Positions 4,958-28,560 of a stretch of DNA of 64,000 nucleotides are shown piece after piece. The position numbers and the translations under genes were made by a program. Origin of the DNA: Podarcis filfolensis (lineage: Eukaryota); NCBI GenBank assembly GCA_964270895.1, contig OZ185437.1. One strand, given 5' to 3'. Numbering within the stretch: position 1 is the stretch's first letter; each line of letters begins with the position of its first letter. The notes beneath the pieces were generated by a model. That model was given only the letters and a program-made list of their open reading frames with translations. It did not search any database and was not told the DNA's origin.

Positions 4958-5295
4958 CTAGAATTTGAAACATGCAAACACAATTAACCAGGTTCTACCA
5001 AAAGTTCTAATAATTTAGTTTGGAACGTATTTCAACCTCATATGTCAATTAGAGAAAATGGCAGATCCCTTAGGACTGACACTTACCAGAAATTGCTGAT
5101 ACTAAATATATCTATGTCTGCATGTAAACATGCAGTAATTTGGGGGTTTTGTGTACATTTTGTGTATATTTCGTATTTCTTTACTATACATACATTTGCT
5201 CCCATCATTCTACCAAAGGGGAAAACTGGTACTGATACTTGGACCTTGTTTACCTCCTTTCCTTATCTGTTGTTGGACAAAGTGTAATGAAGGTA

Positions 5296-5537
5296 CAATG
5301 GTACCTCAGGTTACATACGCTTCAGGTTACATATGCTTCAGGTTACAGACTCTGCTAACCCACAAATAGTGCTTCACGTTAAGAACTTTGCTTCAGGATG
5401 AGAACAGAAATTGTGCTCTGGCAGCGCGGCGGCAGCAGGAGGCCCCATTAGCTAAAGTGGTGCTTCAGGTTAAGAACAGTTTCAGGTTAAGTACGGACCT
5501 CCAGAACGAATTAAGTACTTAACCTGAGGTACCACTG
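5296..5537. mobile_element. Tc1/mariner (Tigger-like) MITE
   Basis: TIR caatggtacctcaggtt / aacctgaggtaccactg, flanked by TA on both sides. Confidence 0.85.
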
Positions 5538-6840
5538 TATATCACTATCAGACACTATAGGAACAAGCCTAGGATCAGTGTACTGTATTCCAAATTCATA
5601 GATTTATAGCCTGCCTCTCAATGCATACAAAGATTTCAATGCATTTTAAAGAACAATGTAATTTTAAATTTTTTTAAAAAACCAACAGCTAAAATTCTTC
5701 AAGCACATCACATTAATCAATTAAAAAATGCAGACTACGGTAAAAACACTTCTCAGTTTTCCTAAAAACACCAGCAATGATCAAGTCACATATATTCCAC
5801 TAAGGAGAGAGCTCCAATTGAGAAGGCCCTGTCCTTGCTCTCTGCTAATCTAACTACTTACTGGTAGACTAGAAAGGAGGACCTTAGAGCCTGATCCAAA
5901 TGTTCAGGCACCTTGAATTGAGCTGCCTAGAAAAGACTAGGCAGCCAATGTAACCAAAACACAATAAGTTTGATATGATCTGAACAGCTAGCTGCCCCAA
6001 GCCTATAAGCTTCTGCACCATATGCAGTTTCTGAACTATCTTCAAGGACAGCTCATGTACAGCATAATACAGTAATCTAGCCTGAGCATAACCAAAGTAT
6101 TTGTTGTTGAGAATAAGCGAGCTTTCTCTAGATAGGGGTGCAGCGTAAGATGGCAAAATGCCCCTCTGCCCACACAGATGTTACCTGTGCCTCCACAAAC
6201 TGCATACCTTGCTCTTCTGTGGAAGCACAACCCCATCTACACCCAGATGCAATTCTCCATCCAAATCAGCAGATTTCTCAGGCCATAGTTCTTCCCTCAT
6301 CTGCATTAAATTGCTTGACCTCATCCCACCCCAAACTGTTATTATTATTAGTAGTAGTGGTACTAGTAAAATTTGCATACTGCCCTATACCCTCAGATTT
6401 CCCAATTGGAATTTCCCAATATTGGATCATTTTTTTCTTAATCTAGGCTGAGTTTATACAGGTTTATACCACAGGAATCATATTATTCTGAGTAATGACA
6501 TATAATTTTAAAATTATTCATTGTTGTCTCTTGTTTACCTTGGAAAAATTCTCAAAATACAGAAATGTGCTCAACAGCTAGATTTAATGTTGATGGTATT
6601 TAACCATCTTGAGACCAAGTTCAATTTGTTCCATGTAGCAATTTTTGGCTCAACAAGACTCCGGCAGCTGGGCTTTAGATTTCATCATGTTCAATACAGG
6701 CAAGAATTTAAGAGAATGTATATCAGTCATGACTAATTTAAGTCCTACTGATTTCAATGGACTTCTGCTGCCAGAGTTCATTAGGTGAATTCTGCCCACA
6801 GTGTCTTAGCAAAATAAGTTGCAAAAACCATATATCTTAC

Positions 6841-8860: not shown

Positions 8861-9021
8861 NNNNNNNNNNNNNNNNNNNNNNNNNNNNNNNNNNNNNNNN
8901 NNNNNNNNNNNNNNNNNNNNNNNNNNNNNNNNNNNNNNNNNNNNNNNNNNNNNNNNNNNNNNNNNNNNNNNNNNNNNNNNNNNNNNNNNNNNNNNNNNNN
9001 NNNNNNNNNNNNNNNNNNNNN
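8861..9021. other. Assembly gap (161 N)
   Basis: Run of N in MOXD1 intron 4. Confidence 1.
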
Positions 9022-19329: not shown

Positions 19330-19760
19330 CTAGAAAGGAAAAAGAAAAACTTTCCTGATTAAGTATGCAAGAAGATGTCTCAGTCAATCATGGCAGCTTA
19401 CCAGATGAATCTGCCCATCTATAACAGCCTTTCCTAATGATACCCTTCATATATTTTAGACTACAACTCTCATCAGTCCTCACCACCTGGCTAGGGTTGG
19501 TGAGAGATAGTCCAGAAAGATTCTTTAGTAAGGGATTGATAGCTGCATTTTACTCTTTTTGTAGTTCTATCACTCTGCACTTCATTTTGTTTTGTTTAAA
19601 TTTGCTGTTAAAAATAGTTTTGTCTGCTTTTTATACAGCCTATATATGATCAAAAAAGCAGTCTATAAATATTTTAAATTTTAAAAATCCAACATCATTT
19701 GTTTCACCTATCCTAAAGTGTTCTGTACTTCAGGCAATGCCTCCTTGTGGAATTGAGATA

Positions 19761-20002
19761 CAGTGGTACCTCTGGTTACGTACTTAAACCGTTCCGAAGG
19801 TCCGTTCTTAAGCTGAAACCATTCTTAACCTGAGGTACCACTTTAGCTAATGGGGCCTCCCGCTGCGTACGCGCCACCGGTGCACGATTTCTGTTCTCAT
19901 CCTGAGGTAAAGTTATTTACCCGAGGTACTACTTCCAGGTTAGCGGAATATGTAACCCAAAGTGTTTGTAACCTGAGGTGTTTGTAACCCGAGGTACCAC
20001 TG
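19761..20002. mobile_element. Tc1/mariner (Tigger-like) MITE, inverted relative to 5296 copy
   Basis: TIR cagtggtacctc / gaggtaccactg, TA TSD. Confidence 0.85.
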
Positions 20003-20285
20003 TATTCTGATGAGTTAATTATTCAGGTGCTGCCACCAGAATCTGTAATTAAACAAACTTCTATTAGGCATAGAGCTTTTCAGTGAGAGGGAAAAAAAGC
20101 TCAACAACTTTTCTGTCCGGATTTTCACATTTTGAAATATGGCAACCCTAGCATAGCATAATGATCCAAGAATGTGAAGCTCACAAATGGCTTGGTGTTT
20201 TTTTTGGCAGACTGTTTTATCTCTTCATTCATGATTTAAGTCTTACTCCCGTCTCTCTGAGCCAGATTGATCGTCAACTACTTAC

Positions 20286-20432
20286 TGTTATACTCTTGTC
20301 ATTGGGGTCACACGTGTGAAGTTGCCGGCTGAAAGCTAGTATCGTATGGGTACTATTTTCCATGGCATACTCCAGATGGTAGTCCTGCTGAGAGTCCTTT
20401 TTCAATGTTCTGTCTGCATTTGTAAAATAATC
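20286..20432 (-). CDS. MOXD1: MOXD1 exon 2 (DOMON)
   Basis: Manual translation DYFTNADRTLKKDSQQDYHLEYAMENSTHTILAFSRQLHTCDPNDKSIT; CAG acceptor, GTAAGT donor, 147 nt phase 0. Confidence 0.96.
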
Positions 20433-21006
20433 CTGTTGAAGAAACAAACCAGAAAATTATCCTGCTGTTACTTTTTTTGTTTTGCTTTAAATAATCTGAA
20501 CTCAACAACCTTTTGAGTTTTCTGGGAAAGAAGTGTAAAAGGATAAGTTGTAATTTTCTAAGAAAATATTTTATATTAGTAAACAGGAAAACATCAGAAT
20601 TTAGCCACCAGAATTTATTTTATAACTGTATGCATATATTTTTTTCTGCGCACCTTACAAAAGAGGGAAGGAAAGAGCAGAAAAGAAAACAAAGCAAATT
20701 TCCCAACATTGTCACCATGAAAACATGAAATACATTCTAATCAAAATAGTTACATTAAAGAGCCACGTGAAACATATTGTGCAGATGATACTTCTTTGCA
20801 TTGCATTTGTGGGTTAGAAGTGTATCCATTATGGTTTTGCTTTACATTCATAGAATGTATAAACTAACTTTTAAAAGTTTGTTGTTCAAGTGTATCTATT
20901 CCAAAGCCATCTTCTGTTTAATGTTTTAAAATCTAGGAAGAAAGTGTCTGCATTAATGAACAATCTAATACCCCAATCCTAAACCTATGTTCTTAGTTCT
21001 TTCTAT

Positions 21007-21628
21007 CAGTGGCGTAGCGTGGGGGGTGCAGGGGGGGCCGGTCGCACCGGGCGCAACATCTGGGGGTTAGGGTTAGGGGGCGCAAATCCACGGGTTAGGG
21101 GGCGCAAATTACTTGCCTTGCCCCGGGTGCTGACAACCCACGCACCACGCTGTGTATGCCCGCAGCCTGTGTTGGGGGGGTGAGTAACCGTCGCCCTCGC
21201 CTGCTGCCCTTGCTCACATTCACTCCGGTGCAAATCAAGCCCTGCTTCTGGGTAGGCCCAGACAGAGGGGGGGGGCATATGGGCCACTTGGCCCAGGCCT
21301 CCGATTCCAAAAGGGGCCTTGGTCAGCATATTCACAATTATTTATATACAGTGGTACCTCAGGTTACATACGCTTCAGGTTACAGACTCCGCTAACCCAG
21401 AAATAGTGCTTCAGGTTAAGAACTTTGCTTCAGGATGAGAACTTTGCTTCAGGATGAGATGTGGCGTGGCGGCAGCAGGAGCAGTGGCGTAGCGTGGGGG
21501 GTGCAGGGGGGGCCGGCCGCACCAGGCGCAACATCTGGGGGTTAGGGTTAGGGGGTGCAAATCCACGGGTTAGGGGGCGCAGATTACTTGCCTTGCCCCA
21601 GGTGCTGACAACCCACGCTACGCCACTG
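21007..21628. mobile_element. Composite hAT-type unit: two ~146-bp direct-repeat modules (21007-21151, 21482-21628) with cargo including half a mariner MITE (21349-21481)
   Basis: 17-bp perfect outer TIR cagtggcgtagcgtggg / cccacgctacgccactg; perfect 8-bp TSD ctttctat at 20999-21006 and 21629-21636. Confidence 0.85.
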
Positions 21629-21695
21629 CTTTCTATTTCCTTGGAACCTACTTCCTAGTCTACATATGGAAGGAACTTATTCATAACCAAGTTAT

Positions 21696-21763
<68 letters not shown>

Positions 21764-21768
21764 GGAGA
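21696..21768. repeat. Compound (TG)n(AG)n microsatellite
   Basis: Directly visible. Confidence 0.95.
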
Positions 21769-22784
21769 AATATTAAATAGGAATATGATATTGTTGTACA
21801 CTTTGTATGTGCCAACCCACAGGAATATTTTAATGTTTTTCTGAGGAAAGATTATCCTACTTCTCAATGTTAGCAGACATATGATATAATGCATAAGCTG
21901 CATTATAGTGTCATTAACCTCTTCACCTCTGAATTCTTTGTCATAATGTGCAGCTGGCTTTCTGACTCCTCTCTAGGTCACCATAAGTCCTGTGACTGAC
22001 TTAAAATTCTCTGATGCTAATTCACAAAAACCTTCCATAGACTTAGAGACCAGGACAGCAATGTCATCTAATTTTCTCTTCTTAGCTTGCGGGGGCATTT
22101 GTGCATTTGTTTCCTCTTTTGCTCAGAGTGAGTTTGCCAGGTCCACACTCCAAAATGAGGTGCTGAGTTAGCTGTAGCTACTATGCTTTCATACGCATTT
22201 TTCCAGCAGTTCTTTCTTTCTTTTTTAAAAAGAATTTTATTAGAGATACATGTAAAAGAAAAGGGGTGGGGGTGGGGCAGACAACAGACCAAATAAATAA
22301 ACAGAAACTAAACACAAACAATTTGGGTGGATAACCTAAGGTATGCATCGCCAAGAAAACCAGTATATATTAGTGGACAAACATTTCCAGTCCACAAAAG
22401 ATAAATCATGTAACAGATCAACAAAGATATTGACATTCAGTCAGTTCACTCACCTGCCTCCCGTACCTGCTATGAGGCAAAATATTCTGAGTTTACATGT
22501 TACCTTGAATTACTCTATTATCATGATCATCATAACAGCTTTGTGTAAGGAGTTATTCTCTGCGTATGATGTGGCACTGTGTGGCTCTGCATCACAGCGG
22601 CAACCCCCAGCACTGTATATAACTGTAGTCTGCCCTAACTACATTGGCAAAGATATATGAGAAGAACTATGATAATGACTCCTTGACTCCATCAGGATGT
22701 GGCTTGGCAACCCCAGGAAGGATAGGAAGATGGGTGGCGTGGGGGTGGGGGGCTGGAAGGTTGTGACCCAGAAATGAGGAAGGA

Positions 22785-23196: not shown

Positions 23197-26100
23197 ATGT
23201 CAGCTCAAAATATTGTGTAACGAGAGCTTTAGATCCCTGCTGACCACATGTGATGTGCTGTTCATCCTGGATGTAGACTATATAATGAGAAAGTTTAGCA
23301 TGTTTTGAAGTAACGATACTGCCGAAAATCAGCACTTTTTTTTTTAAGAAAACTACCGTAAGCAATTATTGGCTTGTGGGTGTAGTCAAACAATTAGATG
23401 TCTTTCATGCACTGGAAGTAATTTAGAAATTGAAGCAACACATGGTAAGTTGATTTTACGGATCATAAAAGATGAGGTATATAATTTCCTACAGATGAAG
23501 GCATTGATGATGAATTGCTCCTCACATGCTGTTGACCCTGCTCTCGCTCTCTCAAAAGGGATTTGCAGTTGATATGGTTTCTGATTAGTGCTATACAAAA
23601 TGGCAAGGAGAGTACTTTCTTATGGATGTAGTAAAAATATGTAAATAAGCCCTGTTTTATCCTTGAAGAATGTAAGCAGAACTGCACAAGGAACCTTGGA
23701 GGGGGGGAGGAATCACAGCTGTCATTCTATCCTTGAACAGGTGTTTTTATGGAGAAGATACCCTCCAACTACTTGACAACCTGCAATATATGTTGCCTCC
23801 TTTCCATTAGTAAAGGAAGTGAGAATAATATGTTCAACTACACTGGGGCACTCCAACACAAAGGGTCACAAGATTATTTGATAGCTTGATTATGCAATTT
23901 ACTGGGGCATATGGGCCATTATGCTTGTGAGATGTAAATTTTGTTCCACGTGAATGCAAATTATGGATGAGAGTTTTCATTCTGTACCACTCAAGTCAGA
24001 CTAGTACAGTGACTAGTGTGCCAGGTCCACATTCACATTTGGCACAAGTTAAGCTCTCAGCTTAATCCACATGGTTATGTTGTGAGGGTAAAATGTCAGT
24101 CTGAGATTCACTGGAAGGATTCAAATGTAATAAAGAACCAAAGAAAAAAAAATTGCTTCGGGCATTTTTAGGTGGGGAACCATTTAGAATTGGCAGGCTG
24201 ACATCATTTAACCTGGCTTTGGGGGATTATGCAGGTTTACAAACTAACACAACAGAGACCACACCCTGCCCCTCTGGCTGGGTTTCCCCAGCAGGGCTTG
24301 ATTAATTATAGCAGAGGGTCCCAACCAGGGCTATAGGTATTTTGTGTATCTGTGAAAAGGCTGAGAAGAGGGGGGTGTCTGTGAGGGATTTTATCTTACA
24401 AATAACACTTGTTTCTACACCTCATGGTAAAAGAATAAAACTTCAGAAATCGTGTCCTTTCTTCACAATTTGTTTCAGCCGTGTTCAAAACCTCTATCTG
24501 TACTCAACACTTCTTCAAAATGGCTGTTGAATTAATGCAGGTTTAAACACATGTTGAAAAGAAGCAGGTCTGCTGTGTGGAAGGCCAGTAAATATGGAGC
24601 AAGATGCCAACTACTATGCTTGTTCTGGTTTCTCAAGTGTGAATGCTCTTACACTACAAACGCACCCCATAGTTAAGTCAATACAGAGAGGCTTCGTACT
24701 GAAATGCCTCCAGCCAAACACCAGCTGACATATAAAGTATGTGTCACACTGACATATCTCCCCTTACTGCTTTTCTATTTGTTTTCTTAGCATTTCTTTG
24801 TTTATGTTGGCATGAGTGCATTTAAAAGAAGAATATGGTTCCGTTCACCATTTTCTCGATTTTCAAAATCTATTCTGATTGTTCCTCTGTAACATCTCAA
24901 AATTGATTGTATTTGATATATTCTTTGTTATGGGTGTCAGCTAACAAGCAAGGGTTATAATGAACACAGCGCTATCAAGTATTAATGAAGAGCTATTCAC
25001 AAAAGGATTTATGCCTCAAGTAAGGGCTATTTTTGTGCAAGAATTCAACAGAAGGGTTTGCAATGCAACGTTCTGTAGAACTTGCACAAAACAAGCATTC
25101 ATAAAGAAGGATTACCCTCTGCAAAAATGGATCTCACAGCTACTGCAGGCTGCGGGTGGGGACGCACAATTCCAGATAGGGGCGGAGACCACGGAGGAGG
25201 CAAGAAAATGCAAGCTGTGTCAATTCATGAGGAAAAAAGAGAGGGTCTTTCAAAAAGCTAGATGCAAAAATTAGAGCTGCCTTGAGCACTCTCATGGCAA
25301 GTAATCCGCCAAGAAACCCACTTTGGCACTATTGCAGTGGCAATATAACTACAAGTGCAGACAGACTGAGCGATTTCTCTGAGGCAGCACCAATCAAGTA
25401 TCTTCGCTTCACTGCACTGAGGTACATGTGCTTTTTCCATGCTTAAATGTATTCATAATAATAGCTCCACCCGTCTGCAGCTACTTTGCTGCCATTGGCC
25501 TACAAATATGTCTGTAGTGAGTGCTCTCTCTCTTTCTCTTTCTCTCCCCCCTCCCCCGCCACCTTAGCTCAACTCTCACTCTTTTCCCACCCCTCATAGA
25601 ACAGCTATTAAGCATGCTTGAGAGACCACTCTTATTTAGACACAAGTCTTGCACTTTCCAAATAGTTAGAGCTGGGTTCCCACTCTAATCTCTGAGCTCC
25701 TGGAATGCTCGGCCACTAATGCATCATTCCAGGCTCCCTCTCCACTCAACCACAGTTTTTGAAAGAATGTGTGGACCCTTTGTAAAGTTCTTTTTTGTCT
25801 CCATAACATAATTGCACCCTTCAACCTGATTGATCTATTTACAAGGAGTTAGTAGAAGCATCTTTCAAGTTCTGTTTCATCATACGAGATACTGAAGCAA
25901 AAGCCCCAGGTAACATCAAAAGGCACACAGAGAGATAATTATTTATGTTTTTTATTTTAAAGTTTTTCTGATCTCTAGTACTTGGCAAATATTTTCTTTT
26001 TTGGGTGGGGATGTGGGAAATCAATTCCTGGTAGGGCATTTTAAATTTTTAAAAGTCTGTGAAAAAAGAAAGCTCTGGCTTGTTTGTGTATATATGTGTG

Positions 26101-27689
26101 TTTTTCTTATAAATACTATGTAAGAACACTTCAGTTCCACTGTTCAGATCTTCCACTATGAACTTTCACAGGTCGATCAGCTAGATGTTGATCTATATCT
26201 TCCTTGATGGAAGCAAAGCAGTTTTATCTAATGGAGCATATGGATTGCAAGTTTCTTGAGAGCAGGGCCTTTTTTAAAAAATAAATATATAAAGCCATGT
26301 AAAGCACCATATTGTGTGCACCAGTATGGTGCAAACATAATAATTCACTTCTGTTTACTTATATAAACATAAGAAAGTAAGTATAACTAAAGGAAAAAGA
26401 TAAATGCCTACTTTGTGGTAATCGAACCTTTATAATCTGTGCTAGATGATATAAAGCAGTTTCCTGTGTTCCTACGATCTTTTGTCATGTGGCTGGCTGC
26501 TAAGTTGACTCATGAGCCTTTTGTGAGGAACTTTATCAAAAGCATTTTGGAAGTCTAAGTATATATAATGTCAACCAGATCTCCCCCAACTGAATACTTG
26601 TGGACACACTAAAAGAATTCCAAAAGGTGTGTGACACAAAACCTCCCTTTGCAGAAGTCCTGCTTGTCAAGGTTTGTTCTTTTATGTAACTGCAAACTGA
26701 TGTAGAAATCTGAAGAGAGTGAAAAAATGAGAAACTGAGGAGAAACAAAAATCTCCAGATTCGCCCATCCCTACAAGGGGACAAATATTCAATGTTCTAT
26801 TACTAATCATATTAATTCCTGAATCTGTGCACATGAAGTGTGAACACAGTCAGGTGAACATTGGGGCTTGTCATCATTAACAATGCTAAAACTTGAGGCA
26901 GAAAATTACTTGTATGCCACTGCCTTTAACTCCAATGAGCACGCTACCCACCTGATCACTCATCTGCTCACCTTAGAAGGGTCTTCGATGGACCCAAGTC
27001 TTGCCCAGGGATCAACCCTCAAACCTGTCAAATTCAGAACCAACTTCAGCACCAGGCTTCTAACCTGGGAGATAAGGCTACTGTATTCATAAAATAGGTC
27101 AAATTTTAAAAAACCCTTTTAAGTCTTCTACTACTCTCTGTCTCGCATAGGATTGCTGGCACACACCCTCCCCATAAAAACACACGCCCCGCACATGCCA
27201 GAATAACTCCAATACATGTTTGAATGTTTCCTCATAGTAATTCTTTTTACAACCCAGCAAGTTCACGGAAAACGCGTAAGGAGGTTTTCCGAAACCTATC
27301 CCTTAAGAAGCATTGGCACCAGGGTTTTTTTTTGTTTTTTGTGAACCGCCCCGAAGATCTTTTCATGAAGGACGGTATATAAATCGAAAATGATAATAGT
27401 AATAATGGCATGACAGTAATGACTATTTAGGAGAAGCAAGCACGAGATCCCATTTTGCCCCTTGCCCCAAACGGTCGCGATTTGGTGGCTGTCCCGTTGC
27501 CTTTCACTACACCAGCCGCTTTGTAATGGACTCTCGTGCTCTGAGCATGCACAGAGTGCACGGCTGCCCATTCCACTGAGCAGCTGGAGCCTGGACCCCT
27601 AAGGAGCTTGGATCCCTGGTCCTGGGAGGGGGAGCCAGCCCTTCTTCTCCTTCCCTCTCCTCCAATGCACTTGTGAGCCAGACCCCCGA

Positions 27690-28560
27690 CCCTGATCAGA
27701 TCGTACTCTGCCCCCCCCCCCAGCGCTGTCCAAGGCGCCCGTCCGCCTCACCTGCAGGTAGGGCTTCCCCGCGTCCAACCCGCCCAGCACGATGTCCGCC
27801 GAAGCCATGCCTCCCGTCGGCGAGAAGCCGAAGCCCACGTAGCCCGCCGCGCGCACCTCCAGGCGGAAGGCGATGGAGCTGCCCTGCGCAGCCCACGAGA
27901 GCCGGTAGCGGGACGCCCCGTCCAGCACGGCGCTGTGTGGGTAGTGGCGCCCGGGCACGGCGGGCAGCCCCCACAAGAGGAGCAGCAGCAGCGGCCAGCG
28001 GCGCATCCTCGTCGCCCGCTGAACCCGCGCCAGGCGCGCACCTCAGCCGACCGCTAAGCTGTGGGGACTGAGCTGGCCGAGGCAGCCTCCTGGCGCCTCC
28101 GCCAGGCGCCGCGCCTGCTCATTGGACGGGGCGGGCGCCCGGCGTCACCCCGCCCCCGCGGAGTCAGCGGGCCTCGAGGGCTGAGGAAAGCGCGGGAGAA
28201 GAAGGAGGAGGAGGAGAGCGCGACCTGCGTGAGGAGCCCTGAGGAGAGCCGGGGCGGCGGCGAAGGTCCTGAGGGGAAAGAGCGAGGGGGCAGAAGCTCG
28301 CGGCTGAGCAACGAGGAGCCCCCTCCTCCCCCGTCAGACAGGCAGAAATTCAACAGGAGAAGCCTTTGACACGTGCTCCTCTTCAAAGTCCTGCTGCTGA
28401 GAGGCGGAGCGGAGGAGAGAGGTGGCACGTGCCTCGTGGACGCGGGAGGGAAAGAGGAGAGCGACGCGCGCCCTGCCAGGCGGAGGGTTTCTCAGGTACC
28501 AGGTAGATAACAGGCAGCACATCCAACACCTGTAAGCCTCAGCAGGGCGGTGCCAGGACA
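27690..28560. promoter_or_regulatory. CpG island / MOXD1 promoter
   Basis: Very GC- and CpG-rich versus AT-rich flanks; CCAAT (minus) 28121-28125, GC box GGGGCGG ~28128-28134, CACGTG E-boxes 28370-28375 and 28426-28431. Confidence 0.85.
27752..28006 (-). CDS. MOXD1: MOXD1 exon 1 (signal peptide + start of DOMON domain)
   Basis: MRRWPLLLLLLWGL...IAFRLEVRAAGYVGFGFSPTGGMASADIVLGG...PYLQ matches recalled MOXD1 N-terminus; 255 nt, donor CAG|GTGAG, inside CpG island. Confidence 0.96.

What the first reader, a model, noticed from the sequence alone, without database searches (positions are those of the whole stretch)
21007..21628. Composite transposon: two hAT-type MITE modules appear to have moved as one unit with captured cargo
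Seen: two near-identical ~146-bp modules in direct orientation flank ~330 bp of cargo. Only the outer ends form a perfect 17-bp TIR pair, bracketed by a perfect 8-bp TSD (ctttctat). The inner right TIR of module 1 is broken (cccacgc-accacgctg). Module 2 begins exactly inside a mariner MITE (after ggcagcaggag; compare 5296-5537), whose other half is absent. Inference: the transposase skipped the defective inner end and used the next right end, carrying the intervening DNA here, like a bacterial composite transposon or Pack-type element. This would be a route for vertebrate DNA transduction.
Basis: partly seen in the sequence, partly recalled or inferred. Interest (0 to 1): 0.7.

Follow-up and report, generated by a model that had tools for sequence, protein, structure and literature searches.

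The report
Young compound hAT transposon carrying captured DNA
A 622-base compound hAT-type ("cut-and-paste") transposon, made of two copies of a very abundant wall-lizard mini-transposon with about 330 bases of foreign DNA between them, sits here as one recent insertion that some lizards of the species lack. It is a tidy vertebrate example of a kind of event already known from maize.

Summary
Two MITE modules, 96% identical and in direct orientation (21007-21143 and 21482-21628), flank about 330 nt. The outer 17-nt inverted repeats are perfect and an 8-nt duplication (ctttctat) brackets the whole.

The new evidence is an exact empty site. Contigs from another individual of the same species and from two related species skip exactly 630 nt (622 + one 8-mer). 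So the whole block is one young insertion that is still polymorphic.

The cargo is ordinary junk. It has a low-copy stretch, an 85-nt piece of a multi-copy repeat, and the left half of a mariner-type MITE that ends exactly where module 2 begins. One internal junction of the cargo also exists in a species that lacks the insertion, so the cargo was contiguous elsewhere first.

The unit therefore has two good left ends and one good right end.

Three things were not resolved:
- a donor locus holding both modules;
- the copy number of the 622-nt unit;
- whether the block moved as one unit (favoured, about 0.6) or was built at this site by faulty gap repair of a single MITE (about 0.3).

The scan has noted similar compound hAT elements before on other DNA of this genome (s1-329729, s1-287799). 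I rate it a new member of a known kind, of moderate interest.

The parts
20999..21006 (.). Left copy of the 8-nt target-site duplication (ctttctat)
   Evidence: The empty-site joint 20998->21629 has 8 letters that fit either side (table 5). T at position 2 and A at position 7 fit the usual hAT target pattern nTnnnnAn (my own knowledge).
21007..21143 (+). Module 1: hAT-type MITE copy with an intact left end (17-nt TIR 21007-21023). It carries telomere-like gggtta units and lacks the last 10 nt of the right end.
   Evidence: 96% identical to 21482-21618. Tens of thousands of contigs of four runs lie on it at 90% or more. 21042 T is private; the family has C (table 3).
21144..21152 (+). Garbled inner end or junction (accacgctg in place of tacgccactg)
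   Evidence: One X15 contig (record 10) that carries the cargo matches from 21143 rightwards, but its 27 letters further left do not fit module 1 (table 8).
21153..21253 (+). Low-copy, GC-rich part of the cargo, origin unknown
   Evidence: No other copy in the window. A single X15 contig covers 21181 (table 3). No Rfam match reached a family's gathering score; there were two sub-threshold matches at E 0.45 and 0.75. No protein relatives.
21254..21338 (+). 85-nt piece of a multi-copy repeat, family unnamed
   Evidence: Contigs of X2, X9 and X15 from other contexts match exactly 21254-21338 at about 91-94%. Depth in this bin is far above the flanks (tables 2 and 8).
21347..21481 (+). Left half of a mariner-type MITE (TA at 21347-21348, TIR cagtggtacctc...). 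It has a private 19-nt tandem duplication around 21421-21459 and is cut at ...ggcagcaggag.
   Evidence: Alignment with the full copies at 5294-5539 and 19759-20004. Family contigs leave the reference at 21442 (table 7).
21482..21628 (+). Module 2: complete 147-nt hAT-type MITE with its own perfect TIR pair (21482-21498 / 21612-21628)
   Evidence: (I1, I2). Its length matches the 147-nt family copies noted elsewhere in this genome (unchecked notes).
21629..21636 (.). Right copy of the 8-nt target-site duplication (ctttctat)

Best explanation
The 622 nt are one compound, non-autonomous hAT element with three usable ends: two left and one right. It entered this site in a single cut-and-paste event. 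A hAT transposase supplied from elsewhere paired the left end of module 1 with the right end of module 2, cut out everything between them, and pasted it into ctttctat, duplicating those 8 nt.

The material between the modules is a chunk of the previous locus. There, module 2 sat inside a mariner-type MITE, and module 1 or its remnant lay about 330 nt upstream.

Shown: one insertion, exact empty allele, hAT-type ends and duplication, foreign origin of the cargo, and very young age (polymorphic in the species, absent in two relatives).

Inferred: the block already existed before it came here. How it was first joined is also inferred. Either two neighbouring MITEs lost the inner right end, or a gap-repair chimera formed at an earlier locus.
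For: 1. Exact empty site. The joint 20998->21629 skips 630 nt with 8 ambiguous letters. It appears in X1 (same species label as the best holders, 1.2% different in the flank), X2 (3.8%) and X9 (3.5%). A minor one appears in X15 (tables 5 and 8).
2. Perfect outer 17-nt TIRs and an 8-nt TSD.
3. The inner borders carry no matching duplications. agcaggag stands before module 2 and tgtatgcc after module 1, so neither module inserted here on its own.
4. Module 2 abuts the mariner half exactly at its own terminus, and the other mariner half is missing. Module 2 therefore entered that mariner elsewhere.
5. Species B has the empty site, yet holds a contig spanning 21254-21367 (85-nt repeat, 8 nt, mariner start). 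Species B and C each hold a contig over 21216 (tables 3 and 8).
6. The only cargo-like contigs of X15 differ from the window at 5 of 224 nt, against 4 of 1234 nt in the unique flanks (Fisher p = 0.006). That fits a capture older than this insertion and fits poorly with copying at this site a short time ago.
7. Precedent: Ac/Ds macrotransposons and a compound Ds-like element with trapped DNA between a full and a truncated copy (PMC3260210).
Against: - No second copy of the unit and no donor with both modules was seen. The window holds no other copy of this MITE, and I could not search the genome.
- All runs were short Logan contigs. They break inside repeats and drop variants, so they cannot show what lies between the two ends in other individuals.
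- X15 branches exactly at 21006, so it has some MITE-started allele. But it shows no contig with the window's version of the cargo. A single-module allele in X15 is therefore not excluded.
- The garbled inner end is what a repair junction would look like.
Confidence: 0.6

Rival explanations
1. Built at this site. A single MITE first inserted at ctttctat. It was later excised from one chromatid, and the break was repaired by copying. The right end copied from another MITE copy that sits in a mariner MITE elsewhere and ran on into that copy's left flank for about 330 nt. The left end copied the sister's MITE. The two new strands were then joined at 21143/21144 with 0-1 nt of overlap. This is the accepted origin of Ds elements with 'filler' DNA.
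For: - The inner end of module 1 is altered in a cluster: 4 changes in its last 10 nt against 5 in 137 nt, as expected for a repair junction.
- The two modules differ by 3.6%, as expected if they come from two templates.
- X15 has a branch at 21006 but no contig with the window's cargo version.
- Filler DNA in Ds2 and Ds-like elements is documented (PMC3260210).
Against: - It needs two events at one site within the short life of a still-polymorphic insertion.
- Freshly copied cargo should be nearly identical to its template, yet the only cargo-like contigs seen in the same species differ by about 2%.
- No single-module allele was seen in four runs, though short contigs could hardly show one.
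Confidence: 0.3
2. Not one event of either kind. The alternatives are stepwise nesting of separate elements at this site, unequal recombination between two MITEs, or an assembly artefact.
For: None directly. No independent run reproduced the two composite-specific junctions (21143/21144 and 21481/21482) in the rows the tool displayed.
Against: - The empty allele lacks all 622 nt at once, and the inner borders have no duplications of their own.
- Half a mariner MITE cannot insert by itself.
- An assembly error would need two switches within 622 nt between unique flanks that are themselves contiguous in other samples.
Confidence: 0.07

Closest known systems
Maize Ac/Ds macrotransposons (Huang and Dooner 2008, as cited in PMC3260210 and PMC3744419)
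   Same: Same superfamily (hAT). Two elements in direct orientation; the outer left and outer right ends are used together; the DNA between them travels along; an 8-nt duplication appears at the new site.
   Different: The maize case was observed genetically, with an autonomous Ac at one end and up to 100 kb of cargo. Here both ends are 147-nt MITEs, the cargo is about 330 nt, the inner right end is destroyed, and the move is inferred from population contigs, not observed.
Compound Ds-l4-483 of maize (PMC3260210, Figure 5)
   Same: One full and one truncated copy of the same non-autonomous hAT element in direct orientation. Unrelated DNA, including transposon fragments, is trapped between them, with perfect TIRs and the TSD at the outside.
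   Different: In maize the first copy is complete with its own TSD and the second is truncated, in a 7.3-kb unit. Here the first copy is the damaged one, the inner borders have no TSD, and an empty allele is available.
Ds2-type elements with filler DNA from aberrant gap repair
   Same: Foreign DNA between hAT ends, with a junction of no or minimal homology.
   Different: Those keep one left and one right end only. Here a whole second element with its own left end is included.
Three-ended hAT element of the same genome (scan note s1-329729; unchecked)
   Same: Two left ends, one right end, one TSD, and a young insertion in a wall lizard.
   Different: That element is 882 nt and is reported as a family of about 50. 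I did not test whether it is the same MITE family. The copy number of the present unit is unknown.
Bacterial composite transposons (IS-cargo-IS) and Pack-MULEs
   Same: Working principle only: cargo mobilised because it lies between usable ends.
   Different: A different transposase superfamily. Pack elements carry gene fragments, usually as amplified families; here there are no gene fragments and no evidence of amplification.

Membership tests
hAT superfamily, non-autonomous (MITE) | 8-nt target-site duplication | tested here: met
   ctttctat on both sides. The empty allele has a single copy, and the joint has 8 ambiguous letters.
hAT superfamily, non-autonomous (MITE) | Short terminal inverted repeats beginning CAG / YARNG | tested here: met
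   17-nt perfect TIR cagtggcgtagcgtggg. That the motif is typical of hAT is my own knowledge.
hAT superfamily, non-autonomous (MITE) | Mobilised by a transposase with a hAT dimerisation domain | not testable with these tools
   There is no autonomous partner in the window, and the genome could not be searched.
hAT superfamily, non-autonomous (MITE) | High copy number of a short unit without coding capacity | tested here: met
   62,188 (X15) and about 25,000-28,000 (X1, X2, X9) contigs were laid at 90% or more, mostly on the MITE and mariner parts. Module 2 is 147 nt.
Macrotransposon / compound hAT element | Two copies in direct orientation with the TSD only around the outer ends | tested here: met
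   The inner flanks tgtatgcc and agcaggag match neither each other nor the TSD.
Macrotransposon / compound hAT element | Insertion of the whole block in one step (empty allele lacks all of it) | tested here: met
   The joint skips exactly 630 nt in X1, X2 and X9, plus a minor one in X15. An intermediate allele is not excluded.
Macrotransposon / compound hAT element | Donor locus with the same two elements and the same DNA between them | tested here: inconclusive
   Cargo-like contigs exist in species that lack the insertion (X2 record 18; 21216 in X2 and X9). One X15 contig shows a different left context (record 10). No contig shows both modules.
Pack-type transduplicating element | Cargo made of host gene fragments | tested here: not met
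   The cargo is a repeat mosaic. The ORF over it has no relatives. No Rfam match reached a gathering score; two matches were far below it at E 0.45 and 0.75.
Pack-type transduplicating element | Amplified family of the unit with different TSDs | not tested
   No whole-genome search tool was available for this organism. Read laying was used once (its cap), and its contigs are too short.

The most novel reading that the evidence does not exclude
Wall lizards carry a hAT transposase that is active now. It makes macrotransposition-type moves in a vertebrate germ line: this segregating insertion is a fresh jump in which two MITEs carried about 330 nt of a former neighbourhood to a new chromosome site. 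With tens of thousands of such MITEs, the same mechanism could shuffle exons or regulatory DNA.
Probability: 0.45. Interest if true: 0.55.

Novelty: new member of a known kind. Interest (0 to 1): 0.4.

Why it matters
Active cut-and-paste transposons are rare in amniotes. An insertion that is still polymorphic within a species shows that this MITE family has moved very recently.

A compound unit with an exact empty allele is a clean natural record that hAT ends from two separate elements can cooperate and carry host DNA along in a vertebrate. That had been worked out genetically only in maize.

In practice it is a ready-made presence/absence marker. According to an unchecked scan note (s1-307151), it lies about 7 kb from the MOXD1 promoter. 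It is also a candidate substrate for testing which ends the lizard transposase chooses.

The cargo itself is transposon debris, so no functional consequence is implied.

Tried and rejected
- BLAST of each part against the window. There is no further copy of the hAT MITE or of the low-copy cargo, only two mariner-type MITEs.
- Rfam on 20900-21750. Only two chance-level lncRNA matches, far below gathering scores.
- The search of earlier findings by sequence for the cargo and for module 2 was blank.
- The bacterial, viral and metagenome collections were not scanned, because they cannot hold lizard loci.
- I considered reading the extra depth on the modules as a copy number. I rejected this because the tool states that summed contig depth is not a copy number.
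- I considered taking the 19-nt inverted repeat 21480-21498 / 21612-21630 as a longer TIR. I rejected it: the two extra letters are flank (ag of the mariner, ct of the TSD).
- The N run at 8861-9021 was left untouched.

Full report
**What is in the sequence**

- A 137-nt direct repeat (21007-21143 and 21482-21618) is 96% identical, with five substitutions.
- The outermost 17 nt (21007-21023 and 21612-21628) are perfectly complementary.
- ctttctat stands immediately outside both ends (20999-21006 and 21629-21636).
- Module 2 (21482-21628, 147 nt) is a complete element with its own perfect inverted-repeat pair (I1).
- The block has two intact left ends and one intact right end.
- Module 1 follows the family up to 21143. 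Its last ten nucleotides are replaced by nine others, with one deletion and three substitutions. That is far denser damage than the five changes in the other 137 nt, so this end was changed by a discrete event or is a junction, not slow decay.

**The material in between**

Positions 21347-21481 are the left half of a TA-flanked mariner-type MITE. Full copies lie at 5294-5539 and, reversed, at 19759-20004. It stops at ...ggcagcaggag, exactly where module 2 begins, and the continuation gccccattagc... is not nearby. It carries a private 19-nt tandem duplication.

The left part of the cargo is not uniform (tables 2, 3, 8).
- 21254-21338 is a piece of a multi-copy repeat. Contigs from other contexts in three runs match exactly this span.
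- 21144-21253 is low-copy. A single X15 contig covers 21181.
- No Rfam match came near a gathering score, and no protein relatives were found.

The cargo is therefore an ordinary piece of repeat-rich intergenic DNA.

**The organism and the family**

Earlier notes of this scan identify the genome as a wall lizard. They record a young hAT MITE family with telomere-like units, of 147-167 nt, elsewhere in it (unchecked notes). In one search, between 25,000 and 62,000 contigs per run were laid at 90% identity or more, almost all on the MITE and mariner parts. Both families are thus very abundant. The window holds no other copy of this hAT MITE.

**The decisive new evidence: an exact empty site**

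Contigs of four public runs were laid on 20400-22400. A joint from 20998 to 21629, skipping 630 nt (622 plus one 8-mer) with exactly 8 letters that fit either side, appears in:
- X1, with the same species label as the best holders; its flank differs by 6 of 483 nt;
- X2, species B, 23 substitutions plus indels in 599 nt;
- X9, species C, 21 in 599 nt.

In each of these it lies within a contig that runs on for 59 nt into the right flank. X15 (species A) shows the same joint at low depth. Its main left-flank contig stops exactly at 21006, which is what a branch between a filled and an empty allele gives.

So the 622 nt are absent as one block, leaving a single ctttctat. The insertion is polymorphic within the species and missing in two relatives. 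Contigs show presence, not absence, so I do not claim X1 is homozygous.

**Origin of the cargo**

Species B has the empty site, yet it holds a 113-nt contig matching 21254-21367. That span covers the 85-nt repeat piece, the 8-nt spacer and the first 20 nt of the mariner MITE (record 18). Mariner copies in general have unrelated left flanks (loose ends at 21345-21347, agreement 0.33), so this junction is specific. Species B and C also each hold a contig over 21216, with G instead of A.

The cargo therefore existed as a contiguous stretch at another locus before this insertion arose.

In X15 the only contigs over the cargo (records 10 and 12) differ from the window at 5 of 224 nt plus a 4-nt G-run difference. 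The unique flanks differ at 4 of 1234 nt (Fisher p = 0.006). Record 10 matches from 21143 rightwards, but its 27 further letters do not fit module 1. I read these contigs as a paralogous, donor-like locus with a different left context. This rests on one short contig, and the tool warns that some records are filtered out.

**Mechanism**

Shown: a hAT-type insertion (8-nt duplication, T at position 2 and A at position 7, CAG-initiated TIRs) whose borders are the left end of module 1 and the right end of module 2. Neither inner border has a duplication of its own. Module 2 entered a mariner MITE somewhere else.

Inferred, at about 0.6: the block existed before and was cut out and pasted here as one unit, as in Ac/Ds macrotransposition. 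A close structural parallel is the compound Ds-l4-483 of maize, in which a full and a truncated copy enclose trapped DNA (PMC3260210; Huang and Dooner 2008 is cited there and in PMC3744419, but is not held in the library). The roughly 2% divergence between the inserted cargo and the only cargo-like contigs of the same species fits a capture older than this insertion.

The main rival, at about 0.3, is that a single MITE landed here and was converted at this site by excision and faulty gap repair. The template would be another MITE copy together with its left flank. The clustered damage at 21144-21152 looks like such a junction, and the X15 data do not exclude a single-module allele. Even under the favoured reading, the first joining of module 1 to the cargo may have happened that way at an earlier locus.

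**Comparison and novelty**

The element works like a maize macrotransposon or compound Ds. It meets the structural tests for a compound hAT element. The donor and copy-number tests remain open.
- It is not a Pack-type element, because it carries no gene fragments.
- It resembles bacterial composite transposons only by analogy.
- The scan has already described compound hAT elements on other DNA of this genome: s1-329729 (two left ends and one right end, a family of about 50) and s1-287799 (a MITE with an L2 tail). I did not test those notes.

I rate it a new member of a known kind. Its value lies in the exact empty allele and the evidence of very recent hAT activity in an amniote.

**Limits**

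- Read laying and the look-up of sequencing runs are capped at one call each, and all four runs were short contigs.
- No tool here searches the lizard genome outside the window.
- Species names are coded. Relatedness is judged from mismatch density only.

Noticed in passing
window 21068-21110 and 21543-21585: Each module carries telomere-like units (gggttagggttaggggg) and a twice-repeated gggttagggggcgcaaat motif. These may be subterminal transposase-binding repeats. Other readers of this scan noted the same family elsewhere.
   Followed up: no
window 21697-21765: A compound microsatellite, (tg)n followed by (ag)n, lies about 60 nt right of the insertion. Contigs of all four runs break there, which limited the right-flank evidence.
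   Followed up: partly
window 5294-5539 and 19759-20004 (reverse): Two complete TA-flanked mariner-type MITEs of about 245 nt, of the very abundant family whose left half is in the cargo. The copy at 5322-5405 is 95% identical to the cargo half.
   Followed up: partly
window 21254-21338: An 85-nt segment with sharp borders recurs in many unrelated contigs of three species at about 91-94%. It is an unnamed short repeat or the conserved core of a larger one.
   Followed up: no
window 20781 and 20806: The window has G and T where all four runs, including both outgroup species, have A and C. These are derived alleles, or errors, private to the assembled haplotype that carries the insertion.
   Followed up: no
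window 8861-9021: A run of 161 N (gap or masked).
   Followed up: no
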